This document shows, one piece after another, positions 16,880 to 39,544 of a stretch of 64,000 nucleotides of DNA. Source of the stretch: Macrostomum lignano (Eukaryota). A model generated the notes under the pieces. That model was given only the letters and a program-made list of their open reading frames with translations. It searched no databases and had not been told where the DNA came from. The stretch covers positions 109,218 through 173,217 of the forward strand of contig NIVC01000343.1 in assembly GCA_002269645.1 (NCBI GenBank), read 5' to 3'. A program made the translations under genes and the position numbers. Each line of letters starts with the position of its first letter. Position 1 is the first letter of the stretch.

Positions 16880-17392
16880 TATGCTCAAACAATAATCCCA
16901 ATATGCTCAAACTGTAATCCCTATGCTCAAACTGTAATCCCTATGCTCCAACAAGAATCCCTATGCTCCAACAAGAATCCCTATGCTCCAACAAGAATCC
17001 CTATGCTCCAACAAGAATCCCTATGCTCCAACAAGAATCCCTATGCTCCAACAAGAATCCCTATGCTCCAACAAGAATCCCTATGCTCCAACAAGAATCC
17101 CTATGCTCCAACAAGAATCCCTATGCTCCAACAAGAATCCCTATGCTCCAACAAGAATCCCTGTGCTCCAACAAGAATCCCTATGCTCCAACAAGAATCC
17201 CTATGCTCCAACAAGAATCCCTGTGCTCCAACAAGAATCCCTGTGCTCCAACAAGAATCTCTATGCTCCAACAAGAATCCCTATGCTCCAACAAGAATCC
17301 CTATGCTCCAACAAGAATCCCTATGCTCCAACAAGAATCCCTATGCTCCAACAAGAATCCCTATGCTCCAACAAGAATCTCTATGCTCAAAC
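16880..17392. repeat. 20-bp minisatellite (ctatgctccaacaagaatcc) immediately after the CABIN1 stop
   Basis: Direct inspection. Confidence 0.95.
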
Positions 17393-17409
17393 AGTTTTAA
17401 AACAAAAGA

Positions 17410-20400
17410 TCAAAGGCTACCGCCGCCGCTCTCGCAGAACTCCAGCGCCTGGTCCAGAAGCGGCCTGTCCGGACGGACCGCGGCAGCGCCGCACCTGGCG
17501 AAGGCGGCCGCCAGCAGTCGATCGTAGACAACGCCGCCGCCGCCAGCAGCAGCGGCCGAGGCCAGCTTCCGACACTTCATCAGCTGAAGCAGCTGGGCCC
17601 GGCTGACAGTCGGAGGCGAGCGCTCGTCTGCCAGCAGGTCGGCCATGGCCGCCAAGCTGCGGTCGGTCAGCCAGCGCAGGTCGTCGTCAACAAGGCAGCC
17701 GCGGTTCTCGGTGCTGCGCAGGCAGGTATGCAGCGGCAGCAGGCGGTCCCAATCGGCCGCCTCGATGGCCAGCTCGAGGGCGCGGCGCATGTGGGCGGCG
17801 AAGCAGCCGGACCTATCGATGTCGTCGCTTGGCAGACGCCAGACGCCGTTGAACAGATTGGCCGGGCGGCGGTCCTGGGGGAAGGGGGGTTGGGGAATTA
17901 AACTGAGGAATAATACTTTAATTCCGAGTCCTTCTAAGAACCCAATCTCAAATTTTCAGTCGTAATTCGAGCTCAAAATCCCAGTTTAAATCGCAAATCT
18001 AATCTCAACTCATAATCGTAACTCAAAATTCGAAACCGACCGAACTCGAACTCAAAATCCCCATTTTGAAATCAAAATCCCCGACTCGAACTCAAAATCC
18101 CCAAACTCGAACTCAAAATCCCCAAACTCGAACTCAAAATCCCCAACTCGAACTCGAACTAAAAATCCAACTCGAACTCAAAATCCCCAACTCGAACTCA
18201 AAATCCCCAACTCGAACTCAAAATCCCCAACTCGAACTCAAAATACCCAACTCGAACTCAAAATCCCCAACTCGAACTCAAAATCCCCAACTTGAACTCA
18301 AAATCCCCAACTCGAACTGAAAATCCCCAAACTCGCACACCTGGAACAGTCCCGGACAGGGCATATGAGCCAGCCGCTGCCAGCCTACTCCTGGGTCGCC
18401 GGGCCCCAGCAGGAGGTCGCGGGCCTCCCGCCGCTTCCCAACTCGAAGCCGAAGCCGGGCCAGCAGGCAGGCAGCTTTGTAGTGATGCGGCAGTCTCGCC
18501 AGCAGGTCGGCCAACTGTTCGGCTGCCATAGCAACGCAGCGAGCCAATCTCCTGGCCAGAAGTTCGTCCGGACGAGGCGCGGATTCGCCGCAGATTCCAG
18601 CGGCGCCGGACACGAGCGAGTGCACAGCGGACACCACGTCTAGCTGGTCGTTGAGCAGTTGGCGAACCTCGGCTCGACTGTCGACCTCCGCTAGCTGCGA
18701 TTTGGCCGAGACGCCGCCATGGTGGGCACTGGAGTCCTCGGCCGCGCTGCAGCCGCTGTCTTCGATCCTGGCCCGCTTGCTGGCTCTGCGGGAATCATAA
18801 ATATAATGAAATATATATATAGGGGGTTTTAGCCTAGTGGTCAGAGCGTCGGACTCACGACTGATAGGTCGGGGGTTCGATTCCTGATCCTACTCGGAAC
18901 AATCTGTGTCTTTATAAGCAAGAAACTTAACTCTGCATTGCTCCAGTTCACCCAGCTGTAAAATGGGTGCCAGCATTAGCTGGGGTAATTGAGGCTGTGT
19001 GTGGCGACCCCCCAGTCCTTGGTCTGAACAGCCGTACGCAGCCTTCAGATGCGCCGCGCAATAGCTGCGGCTGAGCTGTCGGTTGCAAATATATACGAGT
19101 ATAAATACTACGTACGCAGGGTGTACAGGCTCCCATCGTCGGGGCTGTACACTCTCTCTGCCTTGGGGAGGTTGGCCGGAGCTACTCTGCCACCACCCTC
19201 GTGATCTTCAACACAGTCAACTCGCCTGGTTCTGCCGCTGCCGCCGCCGCCGCCGGCATGTCGACGCTTCGATCCTTCGCCGCCGCCGCCGCCAAGAGCG
19301 TCCCGACGTTGAAAGGCAGACTTGGACAGTTCAATCAATCGCGCTTCAATCCAGCTAAGATTGACAGACGCTGTAGTCGGTGAACTGACAGCAGATTTCG
19401 GCCTAGGCAGAAACATGAGCAGCTGCTTGCAGACAATGGCCAGCTGTCTGTACTGCATCTCCAGGGCTTCCACAGCCAGCCGGGGAGTGCTACCGTAGGA
19501 GGTGCTGATTCGTTTGGGATAGCGGGCGCCGCTCTGTCGCAGCTCGTTAGCCGCGGCGGCGTAGTAACCAAGGCAGATATCGGGATGATCGGCCGACTTC
19601 TCGCAGCACTTGCCCAGCATGTAGTTGTACAGCCAGTTCTCGCATTCTTCCCCGGCATCGCGCAGCTCTGGATGGTTGGCCGCAGAGGCCGCCTGAGAAA
19701 TTTGAGATTTTAAATTTTGATCTTGAACTACTAACAGTAGTTTTGACAAATGGAACTGTGATTTGAATAATCATATTACTCAATATACACCAAATAATAT
19801 TTTTACTACCAGTCAGATATACTAAAAATGAAAACTATATTCTAATGCAGGGCCTTTTTTACCTCAAGGAGAGGAGAGGTGAGGAGAGGAGAGGAAAGAA
19901 GAGAGGAGAGGAGAGAGAGGAGAGAGGGAGAGGAGAGGAGAAGAGAGAAGAGGAGACGGGAGAGAGGAGAGGAGAGAGGAGAGGAGAAAGGAGAGGGGAG
20001 AGGAGAGGAGAGAGGAGAGGGGAGAGGAGAGGAGAGGGGAGAGGAGAGAGGAGAGGAGAGGAGAGGGGAGAGGAGAGGAGAGAGGAGAGGAGAGAGGAGA
20101 GGGGAGAGGAGAGGAGAGGGGAGAAGAGAGATGCGAAAGACTAACCATGATCGGGCCGGACTTTGCAGACCCTGTTCCAATGGCAATTCAAATGAAAATT
20201 GAAAAACCTGCAATCGGCTCTATTGGTTTACTCTGCAATCGGCTTCACAACCGATTCCCATCTCAAGCGCGTCACCTGCAACCTACCTGTAGAAAAGACT
20301 CCCTAGCCAGCCGCAGCATAGGCAGACGCCACTCAGCGGCCAGCTCCAACTGCTTGCCCCGCCGGCCCAGCTGGCTGGCGTGCGAGTGCAGCTCGTAGGC

Positions 20401-23400
20401 GAATAGTCCGCGCTCAGTCAGCAGCTTCGGGCACAGCGGATTAATGCGCAGAGCCTGATCGAACGAGCGCAGACAGGCTAGGGAATATTTGCGGCTAACA
20501 GTGCTGCTGTTGCTGCCGTCCTGTAGGTTCAGCTTCTGTTGGAGTCGGCTGCACCGGGCCAGGGCCATGCCTGCGGTGGGAGGTGTGCTTTGATTTTTTA
20601 TACGGGCAGTGTATTATCCCGATTGTTTATTTTCAGGATTAACTGGCTGGCTGTTCGAATGATGTTCAAGTTTATTAGCCTTTCTCGTGTTGGCTTATGA
20701 GCGATTCTTGGGTTTGGTTTATGAGCGATTCTTGGGTTTGGTTTATGAGCGATTCCTGGGTTTGGTTTATGAGCGATTCTTGGGTTTGGTTTATGAGCGA
20801 TTCTTAGATTGGCTTACATGTATGAGCGATTCTGGGTTTGGTTTATGAGCGATTCCTGGGTTTGGTTTATGAGCGATTCTTGGGTTTGGTTTATGAGCGA
20901 TTCTTAGATTGACTTACATGTATGAGCGATTCTTGGGTTTGGTTTATGAGCGATTCTGGGTTTGGTTTATGAGCGATTCTGGGTTTGGTTTATGAGCGAT
21001 TCTTAGATTGACTTATGAGCGATTCTTGGGTTTGGTTTATGAGCGATTCTTAGATTGACTTACATGTATGAGCGATTCTTGGGTTTGGTTTATGAGCGAT
21101 TCTGGGTTTGGTTTATGAGCGATTCTGGGTTTGGTTTATGAGCGATTCTTAGATTGACTTATGAGCGATTCTTGGGTTTGGTTTATGAGCGATTCTTAGA
21201 TTGACTTACATGTATGAGCGATTCTTGGGTTTGGTTTATGAGCGATTCTGGGTTTGGTTTATGAGCGATTCTTAGATTGACTTATGAGCGATTCTTGGGT
21301 TTGGTTTATGAGCGATTCTTAGATTGACTTACATGTATGAGCGATTCTTGGGTTTGGTTTATGAGCGATTCTGGGTTTGGTTTATGAGCGATTCTTAGAT
21401 TGACTTATGAGCGATTCTTGGGTTTGGTTTATGAGCGATTCTTAGATTGACTTATGAGCGATTCTTGGGTTTGGTTTATGAGCGATTCTTAGATGTATGA
21501 GCGATTCTTAGATTGACTTATGAGCGATTCCTGGGTTGGTTTATGAGCGATTCTTAGATTGACTTATGAGCGATTCTTGGGTTTGGTTTATGAGCGATTC
21601 TTAGATTGACTTACATGTATGAGCGATTCTTGGGTTTGGTTTATGAGCGATTCTTAGATGTATGAGCGATTCTTAGATTGACTTATGAGCGATTCCTGGG
21701 TTGGTTTATGAGCGATTCTTAGATTGACTTATGAGCGATTCTTGGGTTTGGTTTATGAGCGATTCTTAGATTGACTTACATGTATGAGCGATTCTTGGGT
21801 TTGGTTTATGAGCGATTCTTGGGTTTGGTTTATGAGCGATTCTTAGATGTATGAGCGATTCTTAGATTGACTTATGAGCGATTCTTGGGTTTGGTTTATG
21901 AGCGATTCTTAGATTGACTTACATGTATGAGCGATTCTTGGGTTTGGTTTATGAGCGATTCTTAGATGTATGAGCGATTCTTAGATTGACTTATGAGCGA
22001 TTCCTGGGTTGGTTTATGAGCGATTCTTAGATTGACTTACATGTATGAGCGATTCTTGGGTTTGGTTTATGAGCGATTCTTAGATGTATGAGCGATTCTT
22101 AGATTGACTTATGAGCGATTCCTGGGTTGGTTTATGAGCGATTCTTAGATTGACTTATGAGCGATTCTTAGATTGACTTACATGTATGAGCGATTCTTGG
22201 GTTTGGTTTATGAGCGATTCTTGGGTTTGGTTTATGAGCGATTCTTAGATGTATGAGCGATTCCTAGATTGACTTATGAGCGATTCCTGGGTTGGTTTAT
22301 GAGCGATTCTTAGATTGACTTACATGTATGAGCGATTCTTAGATTGACTTATGAGCGATTCTTGGGTTGGTTTATGAGCGATTCTTAGATTGACTTATGA
22401 GCGATTCTTGGGTTTGGTTTATGAGCGATTCTTAGATTGACTTACATGTATGAGCGATTCTTAGATTGACTTATGAGCGATTCCTGGGTTGGTTTATGAG
22501 CGATTCTTAGATTGACTTACATTTATGAGCGATTCTTAGATTGACTTATGAGCGATTCCTGGGTTGGTTTATGAGCGATTCCTGGGTTGGTTTATGAGCG
22601 ATTCCTGGGTTGGTTTATGAGCGATTCCCAGGTTGGTTTATGAGCGATTCCTGGGTTGGTTTATGAGCGATTCTTGGGTTGGTTTATGAGCGATTCTTAG
22701 ATTGACTTATGAGCGATTCTTGGGTTTGGTTTATGAGCGATTCTTAGATTGACTTACATGTATGAGCGATTCTTAGATTGACTTATGAGCGATTCCTGGG
22801 TTGGTTTATGAGCGATTCTTAGATTGACTTACATTTATGAGCGATTCTTAGATTGACTTATGAGCGATTCCTGGGTTGGTTTATGAGCGATTCCTGGGTT
22901 GGTTTATGAGCGATTCCTGGGTTGGTTTATGAGCGATTCCCAGGTTGGTTTATGAGCGATTCCCAGGTTGGTTTATGAGCAATCGCCGCCAACTCACCAG
23001 CCCAAGAGTCGAAGCGGTCGGGACTCAACGCCAGATCTCTCAAATAGTGCTTGATAGCCGGCAGGAAGCGGTTGGATTTCAGGCAGCAGTCGGCCAGCAG
23101 GTAGTGAATATCGGCAGTCAACCGTTCATCCGGCGTCAACGGCCGATTAGACTCAGGCAAAGTGTCCACTCCGCCGAATAGGAAGTCGTTAACAGCGTTG
23201 GCGTCAACACGCAGCCGGTCGGGCAGGCCAGCGGCGGCCAAGTCGAAGCAGCGCTCCAGATCGGCCGGCAGCGAGGCCAGCCTGGTGGAATCGAACTCGG
23301 GGAATTTGTCCGGCAGATAGTAGCGCATCAGGTGTCGCCCGGTCTCCCAGTCGATGCTAACCGGCGGTCCGCCGCATCGATGATCCCGGATCCGGCCGCG

Positions 23401-26400
23401 GCGGGAGTAGCGGCCCCGCCTGCCCAGGCCGTAGAGGCAGTGGAAGGCCTGGTCAACGGCCAGGTAGCCCGGGTGGTCCGGTGGCGGCTGTTGGCGCAGC
23501 AGCAGCGGCACCAGACTAGCCACGGTGTAGTTCAGTAGTCGGCCATTGCTTCGCTGACAGCCGGCATTGCAGGCAGGCTGCTGACTTGGCGCCGCCGCCG
23601 CCGCCGCCACTGCCGCCGACGTCTCGTGCATCAGCTGGTGGGCCAGAATCAGCAGGCGGCCCGCAGATTCCAGCAGATTGGACTGACGCTGCCGCAGCTC
23701 CGCGCGTATTCTAGCTTCATCAACTTCGCCTGGGACCTGCATTTGACCGGATCCAGCGTCCGATGCTTTGACAGTTGCAGCTTCCGATGCGTTGACAGTT
23801 CCAGCTTCTGATGTGTTGACAGTTGCAGCTTCCGATGTGTTGACAGTTGCAGCTTCCGATGTGTTGACAGTTGCAGCTTCCGATGTGTTGACAGTTCCAG
23901 CTTCCGATGCGTTGACAGTTCCAGCTTCCGATGCGTTGACAGTTCCAGCTTCCGATGCGTTGACAGTTCCAGCTTCCGCTGCTTGACCAGTTCCAGCTTC
24001 CGATGCTTGACCAGTTCCAGCTTCCGATGCTTGACCAGTTCCAGCTTCCGATGCTTGACCAGTTCCAGCTTCCAACACGGGCTTCTCAGCAGCTGCATCA
24101 GAATCAACTTCCATAGCCTCGGCCACAGCTTCAATAACGCAATGGGCAGATACATGTACAGTATCCATGGACGTGTCATTTATCTGCTTCTCAGTTTCCT
24201 CAATCAAAAATACAAAGTGCCGGTGCAGGTAAATCCAAGCTTCCGCATCTGTGAGCGGCACTCGATGGCGCAGGCACCGGACAATGAGATCGGCGCACGC
24301 AGCCAGCTGAGCGCAAGTCTCGGCCAAGTCGGCTGGCCGGGCGCCCAGATGCTCCTGGCAGGCCAGCAGATTGCGAAACGCGAATGCCACGGTTGATGCT
24401 CGAACTGGGCGGGATTCGTCGGTTGCGGCCAGCAGCCGGAGCAGGCGGGCGCCGTGCGAATAGCACTGGGCGAGGTCGCCGAGGCGGTAACAGGAGCTCA
24501 CGAACATCTCGCAGATTTGCCTGCCAAGGATCGGGCGTTACAGAGATGGTTTTCAGGGGTGTTACAGGGATGGCTTTGAGGGGTGTTACAGGGATGGTTT
24601 TCAGGGGTGTTACAGGGATGGTTTTCAGGGGTGTTACAGGGATGGCTTTCAGGGGTGTTACAGGGATAGTTTTGAGGGGTGTTACAGGGATGGTTCTGAG
24701 GGGTGTTACAGGGATGGCTTTGAGGGGTGTTACAGAGATAGTTTTGAGGGGTGTTACAGGGATGGCTTTGAGGGGTGTTACAGGGATGGCTTTGAGGGGT
24801 GTTACAGGGATGGCTTTGAGGGGTGTTACAGGGATGGTTCTGAGGGGTGTTACAGGGATGGCTTTGAGGGGTGTTACAGGGATAGTTCTGAGGGGTGTTA
24901 CAGGGATGGTTTTGAGGGGTGTTACAGGAATGGGTTTGAGGGGCGTTACAGGAATGGCTTTGAGGGGTGTTACAGGGATGGCTTTGAGGGGTGTTACAGG
25001 GATGGCTTTGAGGGGTGTTACAGGGATAGTTTTGAGGGGTGTTACAGGGATTGTTCTAAGAGGTGTTACAGGGATGGTTGTGAGAGGTGTTACAGGGATG
25101 GTTTTGAGGGGTGTTACAGGGATGATTTTGGGGTTACAGAGATGATTTTGCGGGTGTTACAGAGAGTATTTTGTGGGTGTTACAGAGATGCTTTTGAGGG
25201 TTACAGAGATGATTTTGCGGGTGTTACATGAATAATGTTGGGGGGCCATACAGGAATGATTTTGGGGGTGTTACATCTTAATATTTAGGGATTTTTTAAG
25301 GCATTTTTCAAGGGGTTTTATTACGGGGCAAGACTGTTCAGGTGTTACAGGGACAGGATAAGATAGCTAATTAACTAAGATGTCACACCTGGCCCGTTCA
25401 GCACCGATTTCAGCAGTTGAAGCCGCATCGCTACAGCGCTCGCGAGCGTACAAAGCCGGTCGAAGAGCGGCCACCACGGCGGCCGAGTTGCCCGACCGAG
25501 CGGCAGCGGAGGCCAGCGCAAACTCGCGACCAGATTTGGCTGCCCGACGCAGCCGACGGAGAGCCGCCAAGTTGACAACTGGCCAGTCGGGCGAGTTGGG
25601 CGAGACCAGCGGCGAGTCCAGGCCGGCCGCCAGGTAGCCGAACGCCGCCTGATCGTCCAGTCCGCGCCGACACGCGGCGGAGAGCCGCAGCCGGGCCCAG
25701 GCCAGGCGCAGCAGCAGACGAGCCGGCGGCGACGCCAGGCGCAACAGCAGGCAGGCGATCGAGTGCGCCAGAGACTCCAAATTTGGCCAGCTGAGATCAG
25801 TGCTCACCCAATTGGCGGCATCCTTGACGCGGCGACGGTCCAATCGGAGCTCCAGGTGAGCCAGGGCCACCAGACAGAGCGACTCGGCTGGCAGGCAGTG
25901 CAACCCGCTGACGGACACGTTCGGATTCTCGGCCAGAATGCCGAGGCGCGGCCCGCTTAGGCGGAGGAAAGCTGCGGGCAATTCAGCGGGCCAGCGGAGT
26001 TCGAACTGTTCGGCGAGGAGGCCGCAGAACACGGCGGCGGCGTCGGCGGGGGTGTACAGCTCGGCAGACTCGGACAGTCGAGAAAGGAGCTCGTCCAGCC
26101 GGAACGGGCTCAACAGCTGGACAGCTGCCAATGCAGCGGAAGCGGCGGCATCAGCTTCACAATCGCCGTCATTGTCGTTGTCATCGTCGGAGCTGTCGCC
26201 GCTGCGGCCGGCGCAGTATCGTCTAGCAAAGTAAACGCCCGACAGTCGGCGAACGCAGCTGGGCAAGCAGCAGCGGCCGGAGGCGTCGAGCAGTCGCTGA
26301 AGTCGATCGGCAACCGCCGCGGCAGCCGAGGCGGCGTCAGACGAGCCAGCGGCAGCTGCCAGTTCGTCGTCATCGTCGTCGGAGTCCTCAGCGGTCGAGT

Positions 26401-28359
26401 CGCCGCCGCCGCTAGCGGAAGCGGAAGCGGAATTGGCGGAGGCGGCAGCCAAGCGGTTGGACCGGCGACTGCACAGCAGCTCAGCCGGGAAGGCCTGGCC
26501 CAGACTGGCCGTTGAAGACTTTGCCATCGAGGCCAGCTCAGCGGACGATGCGGGAGTAGCCAGTGGAGGTGGCGGAGGAGGCTCAGAAGCTTCATCATCC
26601 TGGACAGCAGGCAGCTGATCATCGGACTCCGAAACCAGCGCTGCGGGCACCAGGCGGATCAGCCTGTAGGCTCGGCAGCTGCCCCAGCTGTCTGCATCGT
26701 CAACTGTTGAAGTCGCGCACAGTTGCTCGAGCAGAGCCGCCATTGCAGTCCAATTGGAGGCTTCCGTCGGGCTAACTGGCACGAGTTCCGGCACTGACGG
26801 CTTCGCGGCAGCTGCTTCGGCAGACTGTGGATTTGTTCGCGCCTGCAGTATCGGTTTTGGGAGAGTGTAGCATTAGCTTAATGAGTCTCTAGCTGGAAGC
26901 TTAATGAGGCTGTATAGCATTAGCTTAATGAGTTTTTAGCTGGAGCCTAATGAGTCTGTAGCATTAGCTTAATGAGTCTTAGCTGGAAGCTTAATGAGTC
27001 TTTAGCTGAAAGCTTAATGAGGCTGTATAGCATTAGCTTAATGAGTCTGTAGCTGGAAGCTTAATGAGTCTTTAGCTGGAAGCTTAATGAGGCTGTATAG
27101 CATTAGCTTAATGAGTCTGTAGCTGGAGCCTAATGAGTCTGTAGCTGGAGGCTTAATGAGTCTGTAGCTGGAAGTTTAATGAGTCTGTAGCATTAGATTA
27201 ATGAGTCTGTAGCTGGAAGCTTAATGAGGCTGTATAGCATTAGCTTAATGAGTCTGTAGCTGGAGCCTAATGAGTCTGTAGCTGGAAGTTTAATGAGTCT
27301 GTAGCATTAGATTAATGAGTCTGTAGCTGGAGCCTAATGAGTCTGTAGCTGGAAGTTTAATGAGTCTGTAGCATTAGATTAATGAGTCTGTAGCTGGAGC
27401 CTAATGAGTCTGTAGCTGGAGCCTAATGAGTCTGTAGCTGGACGCTTACAGACGAACCAATAAACAGATGAAACATTCACCTGATGCTCCGCTCGCACAG
27501 CCATCAACTCTTTCCTATCAGCCTCCCACTCGCTCTCATCTACAGTTTTCAACTGAATCGCTGCAGCCAGCTTGGCCAGGGCCGAGCCCGCTGGCAGGCA
27601 GTTTGAAGCTGACGGTGCGCAGCGCAGATACTCGGCAACGCAGAAGGCGGCCCGACGGTGGCTCGGCAGGCGGTCCAGCAGCCGACCGCAGGCGGCTAGC
27701 CAAGTCTCTGGCTCGCCCATACAATAAGCAACAGACAGGCTGAGATCCAGAGCCGGCAGATGGTCGGGATTCAATTTCAAACAGGCGCGCAATGCGGAGG
27801 CGGCCAGGCGCAGGTCGCAGCTGAGGTAGGCCGACCAGGCCAGGTGAAAGGCGGCCGCAATGTCGCGCGGATCGGCCTCGACAGCGGCTGAAAGATGGCG
27901 CACGGCGAGGTCGAACCGCCTAGCCCAGCAGTGATGCTGACCGAGCTGACGGTGGCAGCTGGCGAGGATCTGGCGCAGGTGCTCCGATAGGTGAGCAGCC
28001 GCGGGACCGTCAAGGAAGATCCGGCTAGCAGTGATGGCCTCGAGAGAGCGCATGGCCTCTTCAACTGCGGGGCCGCCGCTGTCGCTGCCGGAGCCGGCGC
28101 CAATTTGCGCTAGACGCGCAAGCGCGCGCTGAAAACTGCGCGTCACAAGCGCCTCCTCGGTTTCGCGAGTGCCCGACGCGACAGCGGATTCATCCATAGC
28201 GGAGGAATTAGCCGACGATGAGGCATGGTTTGACTGGTGCCTGTGCTGCTGCTTGTTGCTATGCTGATGGTGCTGCTTGGCCTGCACAGCTCCAGATGCC
28301 GATGAAGCCGAGCTTGTGGGCGCCTGCGGCGGCGCCCCGTTCAAAGCGGCTATTCGGAG
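17410..28359 (-). CDS. CABIN1: Calcineurin-binding protein cabin-1 (HIRA complex TPR subunit), about 1877 aa; start Met not encoded in the first large exon
   Basis: Exons 28359-27481, 26842-25389, 24520-22998, 20570-20287, 19692-19112, 18785-18341, 17874-17410, total 5631 nt. CABIN1-like motifs: LRIAALN at the N-terminus, [86 protein letters not shown]. The exon 5 donor is uncertain. Confidence 0.9.
18000..18335. repeat. 20-bp minisatellite (aactcgaactcaaaatcccc), CABIN1 intron 6
   Basis: Direct inspection. Confidence 0.9.
18822..19084 (+). mobile_element. tRNA-derived SINE, family A, copy 2, inside CABIN1 intron 5
   Basis: A-box TAGCCTAGTGG and B-box GGTTCGATTCC. The 3' half is almost identical to 6530-6665. 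Possible TSD aaatatata. Confidence 0.8.
19868..20130. repeat. (GGAGA)n polypurine microsatellite, CABIN1 intron 4
   Basis: Direct inspection. Confidence 0.95.
20692..22982. repeat. Composite minisatellite (core ttatgagcgattc with alternative spacers), CABIN1 intron 3
   Basis: Direct inspection. Confidence 0.95.
23765..24075. repeat. Coding 24-bp tandem repeat in CABIN1 exon 3 (EAGTGQAS/EAGTVNAS/EAATVNTS)
   Basis: In frame within ORF 22927-24507. Confidence 0.92.
24530..25350. repeat. 24-bp minisatellite (aggggtgttacagggatggctttg), CABIN1 intron 2
   Basis: Direct inspection. Confidence 0.95.
26865..27442. repeat. About 22-23 bp minisatellite (ttaatgagtctgtagc plus tggaagc/attagc), CABIN1 intron 1
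   Basis: Direct inspection. Confidence 0.93.
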
Positions 28360-28464
28360 CTGAAGGCGTGCAACACGGAGGTTCCTTAGTTAATACTGCT
28401 ACTAGGCTCTCTTAAACAGGGCGCAGTCATCACAAGCCCGAAAGTTTGCATCGCCGAAAAGATT

Positions 28465-28750
28465 TAGATCTATTAGGTCTTATGAAATTAAGATCTTATA
28501 AAATTTAGGTCTTGAGAAGTTTAGGGGTTATGAGATTTAGGTCTGATGAAATTAAGATCTTATAAAATTTAGGTCTTGAGAAGTATAGGGGTTATGAGAT
28601 TTAGGTCTGATGAAATTATTATTAAGATCTTATGAAATTTAGGTCTCGAGAAGTTTATGGGTTATGAAATTTAGGTCTGATGAAATTAAGATCTTATGAA
28701 ATTTAGGTCTTAAGAAGTTTTATGCTTTGTGACATTTAGGTCTTATGGCC
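28465..28750. repeat. Degenerate short-period repeat (ttatgaaatttaggtc) upstream of the CABIN1 acceptor
   Basis: Direct inspection. Confidence 0.8.
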
Positions 28751-29270
28751 GAACAAATCACTCCCCTCTTAAACCGGGTGCAGCTTGTACTTTTATTCTG
28801 TACATTCTGTACAATCACAGCATGGCATTAAACTAAAGCTAGAGTCTATTTATTATCTTCATACTAACCGCGGCCAACTCTGCTTAACTCGTAACCCACC
28901 AGTATAACAAAGGAAGCAAATGCAGAGAATTAAAAAGCGAAAGTTAAAAGTTCAGAACAGCAACATTGTTATTGTTAAAATGGACACTCGAGTATTGAAA
29001 GCTGTCTATTTTCCCAGTCGAAAAAATCTCGCAAACAAAAATCAATACTCCACACTGATAGCGCATAAACAAATTAATATATAATAAGGAATCATCAGAA
29101 TGCATCATCTATCATATCAGTAAGCTCCACACTAGTTGAGTACATTGGGAATTAAACCACGTTTTCTTAGAAATTAATCAAGAACAGACTTTCTTAGATT
29201 TGGCTTGTAAAATGCTAAATATCTTAATTTTACTGTTTTAACATACTACTGATGTAAGTAGGCCAACTCT

Positions 29271-29644
29271 GGGGGGCCGTAGCCCAGCGGTAGCGCAGCT
29301 GCTCTGGTGTGCCGCGACCCAGGCTCGATTCCAAGTGCAGCCACATTAATTTGGGGCTGGATTGGAATCTTGGCTTGGCTCGCTTGTGCAATTAACGGCC
29401 TTGAGAGCCAACCCCCCCAAGGCGCAGTGAAGTGTACATGCCTAACAATTGATAAAAGTTAGGGCCGCTGTACACTCCTGTGTGAGTGTGTGCCTGCGTA
29501 CGTATCCGCGCGCTTGTATGCCTGCTCAGGGGAGTCGGCGGAATGGGCAGTAATGCCTCTCGCCGGTTGTGTGCCTATGACGCTTAAATTGCGCCAGGGT
29601 GCACACAACCCCCCTGCCTCTAAAAAAAAAAAAATAAATAAAAA
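29271..29644 (+). mobile_element. Full-length tRNA-derived SINE, family B, with A-rich tail and 15-bp TSD
   Basis: A-box TAGCCCAGCGG, B-box GGCTCGATTCC, A-rich tail. TSD aagtaggccaactct at 29256-29270 and 29645-29659. Confidence 0.88.
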
Positions 29645-30336
29645 AAGTAGGCCAACTCTCAAACACATGTATTTGCAGAAAACACAGACAAAAACGCAAA
29701 GTTAAACGCGCATACACAGCAAATAGTTTACAACCGTATTAATTCTCTATCTTTATGCTTATATCTTTATCTTTGGTCCCTAGCGCGCAGTAGTAATATT
29801 ACTAATACAATATAGCTACTACAATTGCTACAGAATGTTTTGTATTTAAGTAGTTTGGCCACTTCCAAAAACAAAAACAAACGGATAAAATTATTTTAGA
29901 AAATTACGCGTATACAAGCCGTTTGTTTCTTGGAATTTTTTGAAGGCCTGTCAATGCTTATAGCTAGCTTATATTGAACAAAAACTCATATTAATTTTAT
30001 AAGAAATCAATCGGCCATATGTCGGTAATGCATTTCCAAGAAACGTGCGCACTGCACCACAATAGCAAACATCGAATGACACAATACAAGAAGACAAAAT
30101 AGCGTTAACGACTCCTTGGAATAATACGGTTCGCACGAAAAAACAACAATAAATTTATACGGTAAAATATATTCCTTATATACTACTACCATATAAGCCA
30201 TTTGTTACAGCAATTCAGTAGTATAATAGTAGAACAAGAAAAATAAAACTCTAACACAAAAGATTACATAAGAAGCAAATTTTCAATTGAAAGCAGGGGC
30301 GCTTACTCAATAAGAAGAAAAGCGCGACGATATTGA

Positions 30337-33300
30337 TCAGTTAAAGAGTAAATTGTGCGGATCGATATTGTGCAGATATTCAATATGCCGCAGCACATCT
30401 TTTCGCGTGATAATACCCAATAGACGGCCATTGTGCGTCACCAGAGTCTGTCTAAGGCCCAGCTTTCGAAACATCTCCAGGACAACTTCCATTGGAGTCT
30501 GGTCTGTCACTGTGATTGGCGACTGAAAGCGGTTTGCATTGAAATTATTCACTTTTATTGAGTCAGTTAACACTCTAGTTTGTGAAATGTCTAGTTTGTG
30601 AAGTCTAGTTCGTGAAATATCTAGTTTGTGAAGTGACTAGTTTGTGAAATATCTAGTTTGTGAAGTGACTAGTTTGTGAAATATCTAGTTTGTGAAATAT
30701 CTAGTTTGTGAAATATCTAGTTTGTGAAGTGTCTAGTTTGTGAAGTGTCTAGTTTGTGAAGTGACTAGTTTGTGAAATGTCTAGTTTGTGAAATATCTAG
30801 TTTGTGAAGTGACTAGTTTGTGAAATATCTAGTTTGTGAAATATCTAGTTTGTGAAATGTCTAGTTTGTGAAATATCTAGTTTGTGAAGTGTCTAGTTTG
30901 TGAAATATCTAGTTTGTGAAGTGACTAGTTTGTGAAATATCTAGTTTGTGAAATGTCTAGTTTGTGAAGTGTCTAGTTTGTGAAATGTCTAGTTTGTGAA
31001 GTGACTAGTTGGTGAAATGTCTAGTTTGTGTAGTGTCTAGTTTGTGAAATGTCTAGTTTGTGAATTGTCTAGTTTGTGAATTGTCTAGTTTGTGAAGTGT
31101 CTAGTTGGTGAAATGTCTAGTTTGTGAAGTGTCTAGTTTGTGAAATGTCTAGTTTGTGAAATGTCTAGTTTGTGAAGTGACTAGTTTGTGAAGTGACTAG
31201 TTTGTGAAATATCTAGTTTGTGAAATGTCTAGTTTGTGAAATGTCTAGTTTGTGAAATGTCTAGTTTGTGAAATGTCTAGTTTGTGAAGTGACTAGTTTG
31301 TGAAATATCTAGTTTGTGAAATGTCTAGTTTGTGAAATGTCTAGTTTGTGAAATGTCTAGTTTGTGAAATGTCTAGTTTGTGAAGTGACTAGTTTGTGAA
31401 ATATCTAGTTTGTGAAATGTCTAGTTTGTGAAATGTCTAGTTTGTGAAATATCTAGTTTGTGAAATGTCTAGTTTGTAAAGTGACTAGTTGGTGAAATGT
31501 CTAGTTTGTGAAGTGTCTAGTTTGTGAAGTGTCTAGTTTGTGAAGTGTCTAGTTTGTGAAATATCTAGTTTGTGAAATATCTAGTTTGTGAAGTGTCTAG
31601 TTTGTGAAGTGTCTAGTTTGTGAAATGTCTAGTTTGTGAAATGTCTAGTTTGTGAAGTGACTAGTTTGTGAAATATCTAGTTTGTGAAATGTCTAGTTTG
31701 TGAAATATCTAGTTTGTGAAGTGTCTAGTTTGTGAAATATCTAGTTTGTGAAATATCTAGTTTGTGAAATATCTAGTTTGTGAAATGTCTAGTTTGTGAA
31801 ATATCTAGTTTGTGAAGTGTCTAGTTTGTGAAATATCTAGTTTGTGAAATGTCTAGTTTGTGAAATGTCTAGTTTGTGAAATGTCTAGTTTGTGAAATAT
31901 CTAGTTTGTGAAGTGTCTAGTTTGTGAAATATCTAGTTTGTGAAGTGACTAGTTTGTGAAATGTCTAGTTTGTGAAATATCTAGTTTGTGAAGTGACTAG
32001 TTTGTGAAATATCTAGTTTGTGAAATATCTAGTTTGTGAAGTGACTAGTTTGTGAAATGTCTAGTTTGTGAAATATCTAGTTTGTGAAATGTCTAGTTTG
32101 TGAAATGTCTAGTTTGTGAAATATCTAGTTTGTGAAGTGTCTAGTTTGTGAAATATCTAGTTTGTGAAATATCTAGTTTGTGAAATGTCTAGTTTGTGAA
32201 GTGTCTAGTTTGTGAAATGTCTAGTTTGTGAAATGTCGAGTTTGTGAAATATCTAGTTTGTGAAGTGACTAGTTTGTGAAATATCTAGTTTGTGAAGTGA
32301 CTAGTTTGTGAAATGTCTAGTTTGTGAAATATCTAGTTTGTGAAGTGACTAGTTGGTGAAATGTCTAGTTTGTGAAATATCTAGTTTGTGAAGTGACTAG
32401 TTTGTGAAATATCTAGTTTGTGAAGTGACTAGTTGGTGAAATGTCTAGTTTGTGAAATGTCTAGTTTGTGAATTGTCTAGTTTGTGAAATATCTAGTTTG
32501 TGAAATGTCTAGTTTGTGAAATGTCTAGTTTGTGAAATGTCTAGTTTGTGAAGTGACTAGTTTGTGAAATATCTAGTTTGTGAAATGTCTAGTTTGTGAA
32601 TTGTCTAGTTTGTGAAGTGTCTAGTTTGTGAAATGTCTAGTTTGTGAAGTGACTAGTTTGTGAAATGTCTAGTTTGTGAAGTGTCTAGTTTGTGAAGTGT
32701 CTAGTTTGTGAAATGTCTAGTTTGTGAAATGTCTAGTTTGTGAAATGTCTAGTTTGTGAAATGTCTAGTTTTCGAAGCGGCTAGTTTGTGAAAAATCTAG
32801 TTGTGAACTCCTGTACTTTAACGCTATGTTTGTGCGGCAAATTGCAGTACATACCAAGTCAACAACCCGTCTCAGCTTGAGCTCAGGCGGCTGGTCCGAC
32901 CGTCTGGCGTCGCCGCCGTGGGTCAGACGTTCGGTGAAGTACACCAGCGACTCGCTTACTATGCCATCCTCGTGCTTGCGCGAGTACTCTTGAATAAATT
33001 TGCGAAAATTGGATTCATAATTTAATTTTTTTTCTGAGCATCAATGTTCAATACTACTTGCAGTAGAAATATATGAACATGGTAACTGTGTGGGGTCTAA
33101 CTCCACAACCATAGACACAATCTGCCATTGTCCGACTCCACAGCCATAGACACAATATGCCATTGTCTAACTCCACAACCATAGACACAATATGCCATTG
33201 TTTGACTCCACAACCATAGACACAATCTGCCATTGTCTGACTCCACAACCATAGACACAATCTGCCATTGTCTGACTCCACAACCATAGACACAATCTGC

Positions 33301-36300
33301 CATTGTCTAACTCCACAACCATAGACACAATATGCCATTGTTTGACTCCACAACCATAGACACAATATGCCATTGTTTGACTCCACAACCATAGACACAA
33401 TCTGCCATTGTCTGACTCCACAACCATAGACACAATCTGCCATTGTCTGACTCCACAACCATAGACACAATATGCCATTGTCTGACTCCACAACCATAGA
33501 CACAATATGCCATTGGTTGACTCCCCAACCATAGACACAATATGCCATTGACTGACTCCCCAACCATAGACACAATCTGCCATTGGCTGACTCCACAACC
33601 ATAGACACAATCTGCCATTGGCTGACTCCACAACCATAGACACAATCTGCCATTGGCTGACTCCCCAGCCATAGACACAATCTGCCATTGTCTGACTCCA
33701 CAACCATAGACACAATCTGCCATTGTCTGACTCCACAACCATAGACACAATCTGCCATTGGCTGACCCCTCAACCATAGACACAATCTGCAATTGTCTGA
33801 CTCCACAACCATAGACACAATCTGCCATTGACTGACTCCCCAACCATAGACACAATATGCCATTGTTTGACTCCACAACCATAGACACAATATGCCATTG
33901 TGTGACTCCACAACCATAGACACAATCTGCCATTGGCTGACTCCCCAACCATAGACACAATCTGCCATTGGCTGACTCCCCAGCCATAGACACAATCTGC
34001 CATTGTCTGACTCCACAACCATAGACACAATCTGCCATTGGTTGACTCCACAACCATAGACACAATCTGCCATTGGTTGACTCCACAACCATAGACACAA
34101 TCTGCCATTGGTTGACTCCACAACCATAGACACAATATGCCATTGTGTGACTCCACAACCATAGACACAATCTGCCATTGGCTGACTCCACAACCATAGA
34201 CACAATCTGCCATTGGCTGACTCCCCAACCATAGACACAATCTGCCATTGGTTGACTCCACAACCATAGACACAATATGCCATTGTCTGACTCCACAACC
34301 ATAGACACAATCTGCCATTGGCTGACTCCACAACCGTAGACACAATCTGCCATTGGCTGACTCCACAACCATAGACACAATATGCCATTGTCTGACTCCA
34401 CAACCATAGACACAATATGCCATTGTCTGACTCCACAACCATAGACACAATCTGCCATTGGCTGACTCCCCAACCATAGACACAATCTGCCATTGGCTGA
34501 CTCCACAACCATAGACACAATCTGCCATTGGCTGACTCCACAACCATAGACACAATCTGCCATTGTCTGACTCCACAACCATAGACACAATATGCCATTG
34601 TGATCAATGGGATCCATGCTTATTATAATCAATACGAAGAGAGAATTTCTCACCAATTGCCAAAGCCAATTCCTGCTTAGTAACAAAGCCAACCAAATAG
34701 TGCGAATGCTCGGAAACAACAATAGGAAAGCCGTTAACATCGGAGTTAGTTAGCAGACGTTCCACAGCTTCCACAGTCATAGAGTCTTGATAAAGTAATT
34801 TAAGCGCCGGTTCGCCAGGCCTGGGCCGCATAATGTCTGCGGCTATAGTGGTATGCGTGAACTCGTCCTTATTATCTAGGAACGGATAGCCGTTCAACCG
34901 GACGTGCTCCTCATAGATACCGTGCTTAGTGATGGCTTCGCCAACGCATTTGGATGTGACAGCCGCTATCATTAGTGGCACAATGTACTGCAGGCCGCCC
35001 GTTAGTTCAAGCATGATGGCTACCAGAGACAGAGTCATTCTGGTCACTCCGCCCAGAGCCGCGGCAGCCCCGATCATGGCGTACAGGCCGCTGTTGATGC
35101 ACGGCTGGCCGACTCGGCAGAACAGGCGGAACGGGAAGGCCTCCATGTTGGAGACGGCCACCTGTTCTAGAAGGTTGCCAAGGACGCGACCGGCTATGGC
35201 GCCAACAGCTAGGGACGGGATGAACAGGCCGGATGGAACCTGCAGGGGGTGAGACCGGCCGGGCTATTAGCAGCATCAGCTGTCTGCCTACCTACCACTT
35301 TCACCTGTCTACTGATTTGTTTAGCAACTGGCCTCTCACAGCTGACCTCTCTTTACTCTATCTAGCCTCAATTAGTCTCAATCATCACTCTACTCAATCA
35401 CTCTACTCTATCTAGTGTCATTTAGTCAGTCTCTACTCTATCTGGTCTCATTTTAGTCACTCTCTATTCTATCTAGTCTCAGTTCTAGCCAGTCTCTACT
35501 CTATCTAGTCTCAGTTCTAGTCAGTCTCTACTCTATCTAGTCTCAGTTCTAGCCAGTCTCTACTCTATCTAGTCTCAGTTCTAGTCACTCTATTCTATCT
35601 AGTCTCAGTTCTAGTCACTCTATTCTATCTAGTCTCAGTTCTAGTCACTCTCTATTCTATCTAGTCTCAGTTCTAGCCAGTCTCTACTCTATCTAGTCTC
35701 AGTTCTAGTCAGTCTCTACTCTATCTAGTCTCAGTTCTAGTCACTCTATTCTATCTAGTCTCAGTTCTAGTCACTCTCTACTCTATCTAGTCTCAGTTCT
35801 AGTCACTCTCTATTCTATCTAGTCTCAGTTCTAGTCACTCTATTCTATCTAGTCTCAGTTCTAGTCACTCTCTACTATATCTAGTCTCAGTTCTAGTCAC
35901 TCTCTACTCTATCTAGTCTCAGTTCTAGTCACTCTCTACTATATCTAGTCTCAGTTCTAGTCACTCTATTCTATCTAGTCTCAGTTCTAGTCACTCTATT
36001 CTATCTAGTCTCAGTTCTAGTCACTCTCTACTATATCTAGTCTCAGTTCTAGTCACTCTCTACTCTATCTAGTCTCAGTTCTAGTCTCTCTCTACTCTAT
36101 CTAGTCTCAGTTCTAGTCACTCTCTACTCTATCTGGTCTCAGTTCTAGTCACTCTATTCTATCTAGTCTCAGTTCTAGTCACTCTCTATTCTATCTAGTC
36201 TCAGTTCTAGTCACTCTCTATTCTATCTAGTCTCAGTTCTAGTCACTCTCTACTCTATCTAGTCTCAGTTCTAGTCACTCTCTATTCTATCTAGTCTCAG

Positions 36301-39300
36301 TTCTAGTCACTCTATTCTATCTAGTTTCAGTTCTAGTCACTCTCTACTATATCTAGTCTCAGTTCTAGTCACTCTATTCTATCTAGTCTCAGTTCTAGTC
36401 ACTCTATTCTATCTAGTCTCAGTTCTAGTCACTCTCTACTATATCTAGTCTCAGTTCTAGTCACTCTCTACTCTATCTAGTCTCAGTTCTAGTCTCTCTC
36501 TACTCTATCTAGTCTCAGTTCTAGTCACTCTCTACTCTATCTGGTCTCAGTTCTAGTCACTCTATTCTATCTAGTCTCAGTTCTAGTCACTCTCTATTCT
36601 ATCTAGTCTCAGTTCTAGTCACTCTCTATTCTATCTAGTCTCAGTTCTAGTCACTCTCTACTCTATCTAGTCTCAGTTCTAGTCACTCTCTATTCTATCT
36701 AGTCTCAGTTCTAGTCACTCTATTCTATCTAGTTTCAGTTCTAGTCACTCTCTACTATATCTAGTCTCAGTTCTAGTCACTCTATTCTATCTAGTCTCAG
36801 TTCTAGTCACTCTATTCTATCTAGTCTCAGTTCTAGTCACTCTCTACTATATCTAGTCTCAGTTCTAGTCACTCTCTACTCTATCTAGTCTCAGTTCTAG
36901 TCTCTCTCTACTCTATCTAGTCTCAGTTCTAGTCACTCTCTACTCTATCTGGTCTCAGTTCTAGTCACTCTCTACTCTATCTGGTCTCATTTTAGTCACT
37001 CTCTATTCTATCTAGTCTCAGTTCTAGTCACTCTCTACTCTATCTAGTCTCAAGCACCACTCTACTCATCACTCTACTCTATCTAGTGTCATTTAGTCAC
37101 TCTCTACTCTATCTGGTCTCATTTTAGTCACTCTCTACTCTATCTAGTCTCAGTTCTAGTCACTCTCTACTCTATCTAGTCTCAGTTCTAATCAGTCTCT
37201 ACTCTATCTAGTCTCAGTTCTAGTCACTCTCTATTCTATCTAGTTTCAGTTCTAGTCACTTTCTACTCTATCTAGTCTCAGTTCTAGTCACCCTCTACTC
37301 TATCTAGTCTCAGTTCTAGTCACTTTCTACTCTATCGAGTCCCGATTCTACATGCTACAGCCACAGTTGAAGCAGTGCCAAGCTACTATACACTATGCTG
37401 TTATGCGATTTAGCACAGCAGTAAGATAATGCGTTGTTTTTCTCAGGCACACCCAAGTTCTTATCGGACTTACAGCAACAGTTTCACTGCCACTTTTTCT
37501 TTCCAAAAGGTAAAAGACTTCATACTCGTAAACGCGTGCTTGGTGAGAAATGCTAAATTATTCACTAATGCTACTAGCTTGCAGAGCGCAGGCCACAGAC
37601 CCCCTACATAGCTGACAGTTTAGATTAGCACAGGAGTGCTAATTTTCTAATGTAAAAATTTACAAAGGCTGCAGCCACTTCTGAAATTGACTCACTAGAC
37701 TCTGCTTGACCCTGAGACCTAAAAAGATCCAGACAAGGTTTAAAAAGCTATGGGTTAACAGTGCCGCAGCTAATAATGCAAGTTTAAACAGAGCCAAACA
37801 TCTTAATAAAAAAGCCTAAAGATACTTTAAAAATCCTAAAACGACAATAAACTGACACAAACAGATCTCCAGAGACCTGAACAAATGTCAAGCGACATAG
37901 AGGCTTAAAGCGATACAGATAGAACTAAAGTGATCCAAATAACATCTAGTGATCTAAACAGCATAAGCAAGCTAACCAGACCTAAAGCAATCTAAACAGA
38001 CCTAAAGAAAGCCAAACAGACCTAAAACAATCTTAACAGACCTAAAGCAAACAAACAAGCTAAGCAGACCTAAAGCAAGCTAAACAGACCTATGAGACCT
38101 AAATAGACCTAAAGCGACCTAAACAGACCTAAAGTAACCTAGACAAACTTAAAGCGACCTAGACAGACTTAAGGCAACCTAAAAAGATCTAAAGCAACCT
38201 AAACCGACCTAAATAGACCTAAAGCAACCTAAATAGACCTAAAGCAACCTAAGCAGATCTAGATCTAAAGCGACCTAATCATACCTAATAGTAAAGCTAA
38301 CCAAACATACTCCCAAGATCCTCAAAAAAGATTCGGCAATAAAGGCCCCACAACAAACCTTAATGCCAAAGGTGAAAATGGTGACAATAATTTTGAATCC
38401 AAAAGCTAGCAGCAGTTTCCACATGGCGCTATAGATTCCCGGTCCGGCGGGCGCGGAGCCGGAGAAATCGTTAGTAGTATTCCGCTTATAGTCGCACAAT
38501 TCGTTAACATCCTCGGGGCCGCACTTGCTAAACAGCAGTTTAATCAGCTGACTAGTGTTCATTCTGGTGTAAGGATTGGGAAACGCTAACAGTGCCGTGA
38601 CGCAGGTGACAGCGAGCACCTCGGCTACGGGGAACTGGCCCAGTCGACCGAACTTCCTCTGCCGGCAGACCCAAACGTTCGCTCGGATAAAAGCAGCGCC
38701 GAACACTCCGCCAACAATGCCTAGCAAGATGAATGGGCCAATTTCTAGTACGGACCAGGTTGAGTTGTACTCAATGTAGAACAGCACCAGGTGATCGTTG
38801 CCAAACGGATTAACTAGCTTCAGCACCGAAGCTGCAACCATGCTGCAAAAGAAGCTGCGCCACAGAGTCTTCAATGGGAAATAGTAGCTGGCCTCTTCAA
38901 GGCTGAACAGCACGCCGCCAAGCGGAGCGCCGAATGCGATGCTGACGCCGGCGGCAGCGGCGGCCGATAGAACCTCCCGTTTCTTGGCCTCATTGCGGCC
39001 GTACTTAGGAAACAGGTGAGCGATGATGTTGCCGCAGCAAGAGGCCATGTGAACCATTGGGCCCTCCTTGCCCAGACTGAGGCCTGAGGATACCGACAGC
39101 ATGATGCCAACAGATTTTATCAGCAGAGTCCATTTGCCCAGGTAGCCGCGAATGATAAAACCGGATAGGATGGTTTTGATCTCCGGGATGCCCGAGCCGC
39201 AGGCGTACGGGGCGAACATGCGGACCAGCATGGCTGCCAGCAGGGCGAACAGCAGCGACCAGAACACGTACAAGACGTAGCGCAAGATGTAGGCGCCGGC

Positions 39301-39435
39301 GTCTTTGTTCTTGTTGCCCACCAGCTCCGCCCAGGTGTACCACTGCATTGCCGAGCCGGGTGAGAGGCTTGCTTTGTACATTAAAATAACACTGGGGATT
39401 GACAGATACTAACACATGCAGATATAGGCAGAGAT

Positions 39436-39494
<59 letters not shown>

Positions 39495-39509
39495 CAGACA
39501 GACAGACAC

Positions 39510-39544
<35 letters not shown>

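What the first reader, a model, noticed from the sequence alone, without database searches (positions are those of the whole stretch)
28340..28370. CABIN1 start codon appears to be missing; an AUG-ending spliced leader would supply it in frame
Seen: on the minus strand a clean acceptor (ccttcag, ending at 28360) is followed in phase 0 by CTC CGA ATA GCC GCT TTG AAC = LRIAALNG. The first in-frame ATG is about 54 codons downstream. Knowledge: human CABIN1 begins MIRIAALN, and flatworm spliced leaders end in AUG, which can act as the initiator Met. Inference: SL trans-splicing here gives M-LRIAALNG, exactly restoring the conserved N-terminus. I scanned 28360-30337 by eye for a cis ATG|GT mini-exon and found only one (30192-30188, weak donor GTAGTA), about 150 nt after the CLC stop.
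Basis: partly seen in the sequence, partly recalled or inferred. Interest (0 to 1): 0.8.

Follow-up and report, generated by a model that had tools for sequence, protein, structure and literature searches.

The report
Flatworm cabin-1 start codon from spliced leader
The cabin-1 gene of the flatworm Macrostomum lignano has no start codon of its own before its conserved first amino acids, and most probably gets its AUG from the trans-spliced leader RNA, a mechanism already known in flatworms, so this is a tidy new example, not a new phenomenon.

Summary
On the minus strand, CTTCAG (AG at 28361-28360) is followed in frame by CTC CGA ATA GCC GCT TTG AAC (LRIAALN). An in-frame TAA lies 10 codons upstream. 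The first genomic in-frame ATG is codon 55 (28197).

The window is Macrostomum lignano, GenBank NIVC01000343.1. The gene is the cabin-1 orthologue, E 1e-41 to Bemisia tabaci cabin-1. Other cabin-1 N-termini in the database begin MLRICALN, MAPAKIKALN and MFASLN, so a Met directly before LRIAALN is expected.

The published M. lignano spliced leader (SL) is 35 nt and ends in ATG. It is added to 30-39% of genes at [T/C]TNCAG acceptors. CTTCAG is the only such motif in the 1978-nt spacer.

All three long database models of this gene or its duplicate are 5'-partial. They begin 1, 5 and 7 codons after the acceptor, and none has an upstream exon. The only ATG|GT in the spacer (30192-30190) has a poor donor and lies 146 nt after the stop of the upstream chloride-channel (CLC) gene.

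No SL-junction read could be examined, so trans-splicing at this site is inferred (about 0.8). Use of the SL AUG as initiator has been known in flatworms since 2006. This is a new member of a known kind, of modest interest.

The parts
28360..28366 (-). 3' splice acceptor cCTTCAG. CTTCAG occupies 28365-28360 and the AG is 28361-28360. Proposed SL trans-splice site.
   Evidence: Sequence. Matches the published M. lignano SL-acceptor motif [T/C]TNCAG (PMC8629364). It is the only such motif on this strand in the 1978-nt spacer. Identical in the duplicate locus L001 at 5980-5985.
28389..28395 (-). Candidate branch point TATTAAC, with the branch A about 30 nt upstream of the AG.
   Evidence: Read from the sequence. 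This is inference only.
28390..28392 (-). In-frame TAA stop, 10 codons upstream of the first exon codon. It closes the reading frame upstream.
27481..28359 (-). First coding exon of cabin-1 (293 codons, LRIAALNG...RAEHQ), ending at donor CAG|GTGAAT.
   Evidence: 100% match to PAA85158.1. TPR_2 hit. Colinear with Bemisia cabin-1 residues 10-208.
28339..28359 (-). Codons for LRIAALN, the conserved cabin-1 N-terminal motif, lacking its Met.
28195..28197 (-). First genomic in-frame ATG (codon 55), context tccgctATGg. Fallback start.
28224..28226 (-). Out-of-frame ATG that opens a 27-codon ORF overlapping the codon-55 ATG. It would intercept ribosomes that had skipped the SL AUG.
17410..28359 (-). 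Cabin-1 gene (GenBank BOX15_Mlig027893g1, PAA85158.1, annotated 5'-partial from 28338). Eight matching blocks found.
30338..41974 (-). Upstream same-strand CLC-3/4/5-type chloride channel gene. Its stop codon is at 30340-30338. Possible upstream cistron.
28792..28854 (-). The only two AATAAA signals in the spacer (28854-28849 and 28797-28792). Candidate CLC poly(A) signals, about 430-490 nt before the acceptor.
   Evidence: Their function is inferred.
30190..30192 (-). The only ATG|GT in the spacer, with donor gtagta. Rival cis mini-exon end.
   Evidence: The donor departs from GT[G/A]AG (PMC8629364) and from 5 of 6 donors of this gene at position 5.

Best explanation
The pre-mRNA of M. lignano cabin-1 is SL trans-spliced at the CTTCAG acceptor ending at window 28360. 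The 35-nt leader (...TTTATTGCATG) is joined to CTCCGAATAGCC..., so the leader's terminal AUG becomes codon 1 and the protein starts MLRIAALNG. That restores the conserved cabin-1 N-terminus, and the gene itself carries no initiator codon for it.

Shown here: the sequence anatomy, the species, the gene identity, the N-terminal conservation, and the absence of any upstream exon in the existing gene models.

Inferred: that the SL is actually joined at this acceptor, and that translation starts at the SL AUG.

A secondary and weaker inference is that cabin-1 is the downstream cistron of a CLC/cabin-1 transcription unit.
For: (1) Species. The window is identical to NIVC01000343.1 of M. lignano.
(2) Its SL ends in ATG, is added to 30-39% of genes, and uses acceptors of the form [T/C]TNCAG. 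SL genes are enriched for genes conserved with human. The terminal ATG is conserved in two sister species and is described as a likely start codon (PMC10468722).
(3) CTTCAG directly abuts the LRIAALN codons and is the only such motif in the spacer.
(4) In-frame TAA lies 10 codons upstream with no ATG between.
(5) An in-silico join gives an open ORF from the SL AUG, which is also the first AUG of the mRNA.
(6) Other cabin-1 N-termini are MLRICALN, MAPAKIKALN and MFASLN. Orthology is E 1e-41.
(7) Three models are all 5'-partial with no upstream exon: PAA85158.1 starts at codon 8, PAA88095.1 (duplicate locus) at codon 6, and A0A1I8JR48 (older assembly) at codon 2. The GenBank annotation came from an SL-aware RNA-seq pipeline.
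(8) The duplicate locus has the same acceptor and likewise no ATG, so this is not an assembly error.
(9) An out-of-frame ATG at 28226 sits before the codon-55 ATG.
(10) No copy of the SL lies in the window, so a leader would have to come in trans.
(11) The mechanism has precedent. In S. mansoni the SL AUG is in frame in 28% of trans-spliced mRNAs, and more than 40 cDNAs need it.
Against: No read, cDNA or peptide showing the SL joined to CTCCGAATAGCC was available here.

The annotated 5' ends (28338 here; 15 nt into the exon in the duplicate) do not coincide exactly with the acceptor. I attribute this to peak-based boundary cutting in the TBONE pipeline, but could not verify that.

The two M. 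lignano copies are about 97% identical everywhere, so their agreement says nothing about selection.

The codon-55 ATG has a good context (G at -3, G at +4).

One ATG|GT exists upstream, at 30192.
Confidence: 0.8

Rival explanations
1. A cis-spliced upstream exon ending in ATG supplies the Met. It would be either the 30192-30190 ATG|gtagta mini-exon or an exon further upstream, within or beyond the CLC gene.
For: One ATG|GT exists at 30192-30190 and is also present in the duplicate locus. The phase would be correct.
Against: The donor gtagta departs from GT[G/A]AG and from this gene's donors. It lies 146 nt after the CLC stop, probably inside the CLC 3'UTR, because the only AATAAA signals are at 28854 and 28797. 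That leaves no room for a promoter. None of three RNA-based gene models has an upstream exon. Its presence in the duplicate is uninformative at 97% overall identity.
Confidence: 0.07
2. Translation of the main product starts at the genomic ATG 28197 (codon 55). LRIAALN and the low-complexity stretch after it would then be 5'UTR.
For: Good Kozak-like context tccgctATGg. Codons 8-54 are low-complexity (Q/H/S-rich) and not alignable to other cabin-1 proteins.
Against: An untranslated region would not keep the 7-residue N-terminal cabin-1 motif in frame, open for 54 codons, directly after a splice acceptor. An out-of-frame ATG at 28226, with a 27-codon ORF overlapping 28197, precedes it. On an SL-spliced mRNA the SL AUG comes first.
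Confidence: 0.08
3. Non-AUG initiation on an unspliced 5' leader, for example at the in-frame AGG (28386) or ATA (28353).
For: The frame is open from 28389. AGG and ATA differ from AUG by one base.
Against: These are among the weakest near-cognate codons. The leader carries out-of-frame ATGs at 28451 and 28430. The strong acceptor placed exactly at the conserved residue would be left unexplained.
Confidence: 0.02
4. Artefact or decaying copy: an assembly error removed the ATG, or this duplicate is a pseudogene.
For: M. lignano is a hidden polyploid with many duplicated loci. The older ML2 model is riddled with frameshifts.
Against: Two independent loci of Mlig_3_7 and the ML2 model all read ...CAG|CTC CGA ATA.... 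The ORF is intact over 1791 codons and eight matching blocks.
Confidence: 0.02

Closest known systems
Flatworm SL 3'-terminal AUG used as initiator methionine (Cheng, Cohen, Ndegwa & Davis 2006, J Biol Chem 281:733; called 'slORFs' in PMC9851317)
   Same: The leader ends in AUG. The acceptor sits directly before a conserved residue 2. There is no genomic AUG, and homology to orthologues requires the SL Met.
   Different: That work was shown experimentally in Schistosoma mansoni. Here the case is in the free-living macrostomid M. lignano, for cabin-1, and rests on genome anatomy and gene models, not on SL-cDNA or translation assays.
SL trans-splicing in Macrostomum lignano (Wasik 2015; Wudarski 2017, PMC5730564; Ustyantsev & Berezikov 2021, PMC8629364)
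   Same: Same species. The acceptor fits [T/C]TNCAG. The gene is conserved with human, like 70% of SL genes there. A same-strand upstream gene sits close by, as in their operons.
   Different: The papers read here do not list this gene, and no paper in the searchable library names its locus tags. None of the papers read analyses dependence of ORFs on the SL AUG in this species.
CABIN1 / Hir3, subunit of the HIRA histone chaperone complex
   Same: TPR-rich N-terminal exon, conserved central and C-terminal blocks, and an N-terminal x-I-x-A-L-N motif.
   Different: Low-complexity Q/H/S insert after the motif and a coding minisatellite in the third coding block. The model ends at 1791 aa, with no region matching the C-terminal third of insect cabin-1.

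Membership tests
SL-AUG-dependent trans-spliced gene (flatworm slORF) | Host organism has an SL RNA whose leader ends in AUG | tested here: met
   The window is M. lignano NIVC01000343.1. The published SL is CGGTCTCTTACTGCGAAGACTCAATTTATTGCATG.
SL-AUG-dependent trans-spliced gene (flatworm slORF) | 3' splice acceptor at the 5' end of the first coding exon, of the type used for SL addition | tested here: met
   CTTCAG fits [T/C]TNCAG and is the only match in the 1978-nt spacer.
SL-AUG-dependent trans-spliced gene (flatworm slORF) | SL AUG in frame with the main ORF, and no genomic in-frame AUG upstream of the conserved N-terminus | tested here: met
   The in-silico join gives MLRIAALN with an open frame. 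An in-frame TAA lies 10 codons upstream. The first genomic in-frame ATG is codon 55.
SL-AUG-dependent trans-spliced gene (flatworm slORF) | Orthologue N-termini require a Met at that position | tested here: met
   P0238 starts MLRICALN, Bemisia cabin-1 starts MAPAKIKALN, and P0243 starts MFASLN.
SL-AUG-dependent trans-spliced gene (flatworm slORF) | cDNA or RNA-seq reads with the SL joined at this acceptor | not testable with these tools
   No read or transcript collection for M. lignano could be queried. The only indirect support is three 5'-partial models that start 1-7 codons after the acceptor.
SL-AUG-dependent trans-spliced gene (flatworm slORF) | Translation initiates at the SL AUG | not testable with these tools
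   Needs Ribo-seq, N-terminal proteomics or a reporter assay.
CABIN1 / Hir3 family | Sequence homology along the protein to named cabin-1, including the TPR N-terminal region | tested here: met
   BLASTP against Bemisia tabaci cabin-1 gives E 1e-41, 5e-17 and 8e-13 in three colinear blocks. TPR_2 scores 28.6 bits against a cut-off of 27.
M. lignano operon (downstream cistron) | Same-strand upstream gene with a repeat-adjusted intergenic distance under 1 kb, and the downstream gene SL trans-spliced | tested here: inconclusive
   The CLC stop lies 1977 nt upstream on the same strand. Removing the 374-nt SINE-like insertion and the 275-nt tandem repeat leaves about 1.3 kb from the stop codon. From the AATAAA at 28797 the distance is only about 430 nt, or about 160 nt without the repeat. 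The real poly(A) site is unknown.

The most novel reading that the evidence does not exclude
Cabin-1, a subunit of the HIRA histone H3.3 chaperone complex, is in M. lignano strictly dependent on SL trans-splicing for its start codon, in both genomic copies. It is expressed as the downstream cistron of a chloride-channel/cabin-1 operon. Production of full-length cabin-1 would then be gated by trans-splicing, and any unspliced or alternatively started mRNA would give at best an N-terminally truncated protein lacking the conserved ALN motif.
Probability: 0.3. Interest if true: 0.4.

Novelty: new member of a known kind. Interest (0 to 1): 0.3.

Why it matters
It explains why GenBank lists this conserved chromatin gene and its duplicate as 'hypothetical protein, partial'. 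The complete N-terminus is M + LRIAALN, and the Met is encoded by the SL RNA gene elsewhere in the genome.

It is a clean case for correcting gene models in Macrostomum and other flatworms, where SL-trimmed RNA-seq pipelines leave SL-AUG-dependent ORFs 5'-incomplete. It would also serve as a test case for tools that add the SL before ORF calling.

It does not reveal a new mechanism.

Tried and rejected
- Word-indexed protein searches with exon 1 and with the conserved central part of cabin-1 found nothing. The exhaustive representative search was needed.
- Exact look-ups of prokaryote-style ORFs from the window found nothing.
- The two PDB sequence searches, with exon 1 and with the C-terminal block, found no solved cabin-1 relative, only generic TPR proteins and one chance hit.
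- Rfam and ARAGORN found nothing in the window.
- No SL copy lies in the window, which rules out a local cis copy of the leader such as the one reported upstream of Mlig013257.g1.
- No paper in the library names the locus tags Mlig027893 or Mlig012606. No supplementary text was held for PMC8629364, and the three small files held for PMC5730564 were not opened.
- I first suspected a trematode from the GC- and Ala-rich coding sequence. That was rejected once the CLC exon hit M. lignano and the cabin-1 exon matched PAA85158.1 at 100%.
- A dN/dS test between the two M. lignano copies was dropped because they are about 97% identical in coding and non-coding DNA alike.
- The alternative acceptor AATAG|CC (AG at 28351-28350) was rejected. 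The SL-ATG joined there reads ATG CCG CTT TGA.

Full report
**What is in the sequence.** On the minus strand the window reads ...gtgttgcacgccttcag|CTC CGA ATA GCC GCT TTG AAC GGG. The AG is at 28361-28360 and the first exon base is 28359. Reading the same frame upstream gives TAA at 28392-28390 and then ten sense codons, none of them ATG. The first genomic in-frame ATG is 28197-28195, codon 55. The exon runs 293 codons to a donor CAG|GTGAAT at 27480. The only ATG|GT on this strand between 28340 and 30600 is at 30192-30190 (ATG|gtagtagta), 146 nt after the stop codon of the upstream gene.

**Which organism and which gene.** The upstream same-strand gene is a CLC-3/4/5-type chloride channel (Pfam Voltage_CLC E 4.5e-61). 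Its best database match was a Macrostomum lignano protein.
- An exhaustive HMMER search with exon 1 found a 100% identical protein, P0121. This is PAA85158.1, 'hypothetical protein BOX15_Mlig027893g1, partial [Macrostomum lignano]'.
- It is encoded on NIVC01000343.1 of assembly GCA_002269645.1.
- The retrieved locus is base-for-base identical to the window, and window coordinate + 109217 gives the record coordinate.
- The protein is the cabin-1 orthologue. BLASTP against Bemisia tabaci 'calcineurin-binding protein cabin-1' (XP_018916793.1) gives three colinear blocks with E 1e-41, 5e-17 and 8e-13. The N-terminal TPR block aligns to exon 1, and TPR_2 passes Pfam's cut-off in exon 1.

Retrieved sequences make the same point.
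- A 221-aa cabin-1 N-terminal fragment (P0238) starts MLRICALNESGSD.
- Bemisia cabin-1 starts MAPAKIKALNDNSS.
- P0243 starts MFASLNRESD.

M1 and the L-N pair are invariant in the four-sequence alignment. A Met directly before LRIAALN is thus what homology predicts, and the genome does not encode it.

**Does the host supply an AUG in trans?** Yes, according to the literature.
- The M. lignano SL is a single 35-nt sequence, CGGTCTCTTACTGCGAAGACTCAATTTATTGCATG.
- It is added to 30% of genes in the deduplicated annotation. The top motif at SL acceptors is [T/C]TNCAG, and the cis donor consensus is GT[G/A]AG. 70% of SL genes are conserved with human (PMC8629364).
- The genome paper gives 38.8% trans-spliced genes (PMC5730564).
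- The leader and its terminal ATG are conserved in M. cliftonense and M. hystrix, where the authors call it a likely translation start codon (PMC10468722).
- Use of the flatworm SL AUG as initiator Met was shown in Schistosoma mansoni by Cheng et al. 2006. As summarised in PMC9851317 and PMC12582326, it is in frame in 28% of trans-spliced mRNAs and required by more than 40 cDNAs.

**How the locus fits.**
- The acceptor CTTCAG fits [T/C]TNCAG. It is the only occurrence of that motif on this strand in the whole 1978-nt spacer.
- It resembles the six cis acceptors of the same gene, five of which are CAG|.
- A UACUAAC-like TATTAAC lies 30 nt upstream (read from the sequence).
- Joining the published SL to 28359 in silico makes the SL AUG the first AUG of the mRNA. 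It is in frame and open through the exon, giving MLRIAALNGAPPQ....
- No copy of the SL lies in the window, so the leader has to come in trans.

**Independent support from existing gene models.** Three long models exist.
- PAA85158.1 (this locus) starts GAPPQ, at codon 8.
- PAA88095.1 (the duplicate locus on NIVC01000202.1) starts LNAAPPQ, at codon 6.
- UniRef A0A1I8JR48 (older ML2 assembly, with frameshifts) starts RIAALNAAPPQ, at codon 2.

None has a Met. The two GenBank models are flagged partial in their titles, and none has an upstream exon. No gene is annotated between CLC and cabin-1 at either locus. The GenBank annotation was built from deep RNA-seq by a pipeline that trims SL from reads and cuts transcripts at SL signal peaks. 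Models that begin a few codons after an acceptor and lack a start are what such a pipeline would produce for an SL-AUG-dependent gene. I cannot explain the exact offsets of 15 and 21 nt other than by peak-based cutting.

The duplicate locus has the identical acceptor and LRIAALN codons and likewise no ATG. That excludes a local assembly error. Because the copies are about 97% identical in spacer and exon alike, it gives no evidence of selection.

**Rivals.**
- *Cis mini-exon at 30192.* It has a donor (gtagta) that departs from the consensus and from this gene's donors at position 5. It lies 146 nt after the CLC stop, upstream of the only two AATAAA signals in the spacer (28854, 28797), so probably inside the CLC 3'UTR with no room for a promoter.
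- *Initiation at codon 55.* The context is good (tccgctATGg). However, an out-of-frame ATG at 28226 opens a 27-codon ORF that overlaps it. This reading would also leave the in-frame, acceptor-abutting N-terminal motif unexplained.
- *Non-AUG initiation.* This would have to use AGG or ATA.
- *Pseudogene or artefact.* This is contradicted by an intact 1791-codon ORF in two loci.

**Operon idea (secondary).** CLC and cabin-1 lie on the same strand. The spacer contains a 374-nt SINE-like insertion that is absent from the duplicate locus, and a 275-nt tandem repeat. From the AATAAA at 28797 to the acceptor is about 430 nt, or about 160 nt without the repeat. That is within the published operon criterion of under 1 kb repeat-adjusted distance. 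Without the poly(A) site this remains open.

**Verdict.** The decisive datum, an SL-junction read at 28359, could not be obtained here. I put SL trans-splicing with use of the SL AUG at about 0.8. The mechanism is textbook for flatworms and the SL of this species is published. This is a new, well-documented member of a known kind, useful mainly for correcting a 5'-partial gene model. Interest 0.3.

Noticed in passing
window 29271-29644: A 374-nt tRNA-derived SINE-like insertion. It has A-box- and B-box-like motifs, a poly(A)-rich tail on the + strand, and is flanked by a 15-nt target-site duplication AGAGTTGGCCTACTT. It is absent from the duplicate locus L001 (NIVC01000202.1), so it inserted after the duplication. 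ARAGORN does not call it a tRNA.
   Followed up: partly
window 28473-28747: A 64-nt tandem repeat of 4.2 copies, 87% matches, lying between the AATAAA signals and the cabin-1 acceptor. The duplicate locus has fewer copies, which makes its spacer shorter.
   Followed up: partly
window about 23650-24000 (minus strand, third coding block of cabin-1): A coding 24-nt minisatellite (EAGTGQAS / EAGTVNAS units). The GenBank model PAA85158.1 skips 120 nt of it (23886-23767), and the duplicate copy has a different unit count. This is either an annotated pseudo-intron inside the repeat or a mapping artefact.
   Followed up: partly
window about 19224 (minus strand): Intron 5 of cabin-1 appears to use a GC donor (ACCAG|GCGAGT...CGCAG|AGCC). 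This is required to reproduce the annotated protein ...TRASKRA....
   Followed up: no
window 1-4200, 8100-8900, 10000-11200, 12900-13500, 16900-17600, 33000-34600, 40200-41200, 42100-43600: Very many long minisatellite arrays, open in several frames on both strands, in introns and spacers. This fits the highly repetitive M. lignano genome. They generate many spurious long ORFs.
   Followed up: no
window 46900-47240 and 52785-53135 (+), 57328-58023 (+): Open frames that look like THAP-type zinc-finger domains, and one that looks like a transposase. They are probably mobile-element remnants in the AT-rich right half of the window. This was judged by eye only.
   Followed up: no
protein P0272 (PAA85154.1, Mlig012606g2): A third cabin-1-like model of 1017 aa, starting at an internal Met, is recorded on the same 291-kb contig as this gene. 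It is not encoded in the window, where the matching blocks are only 88-99% identical. A further partial copy may therefore lie elsewhere on the contig.
   Followed up: partly
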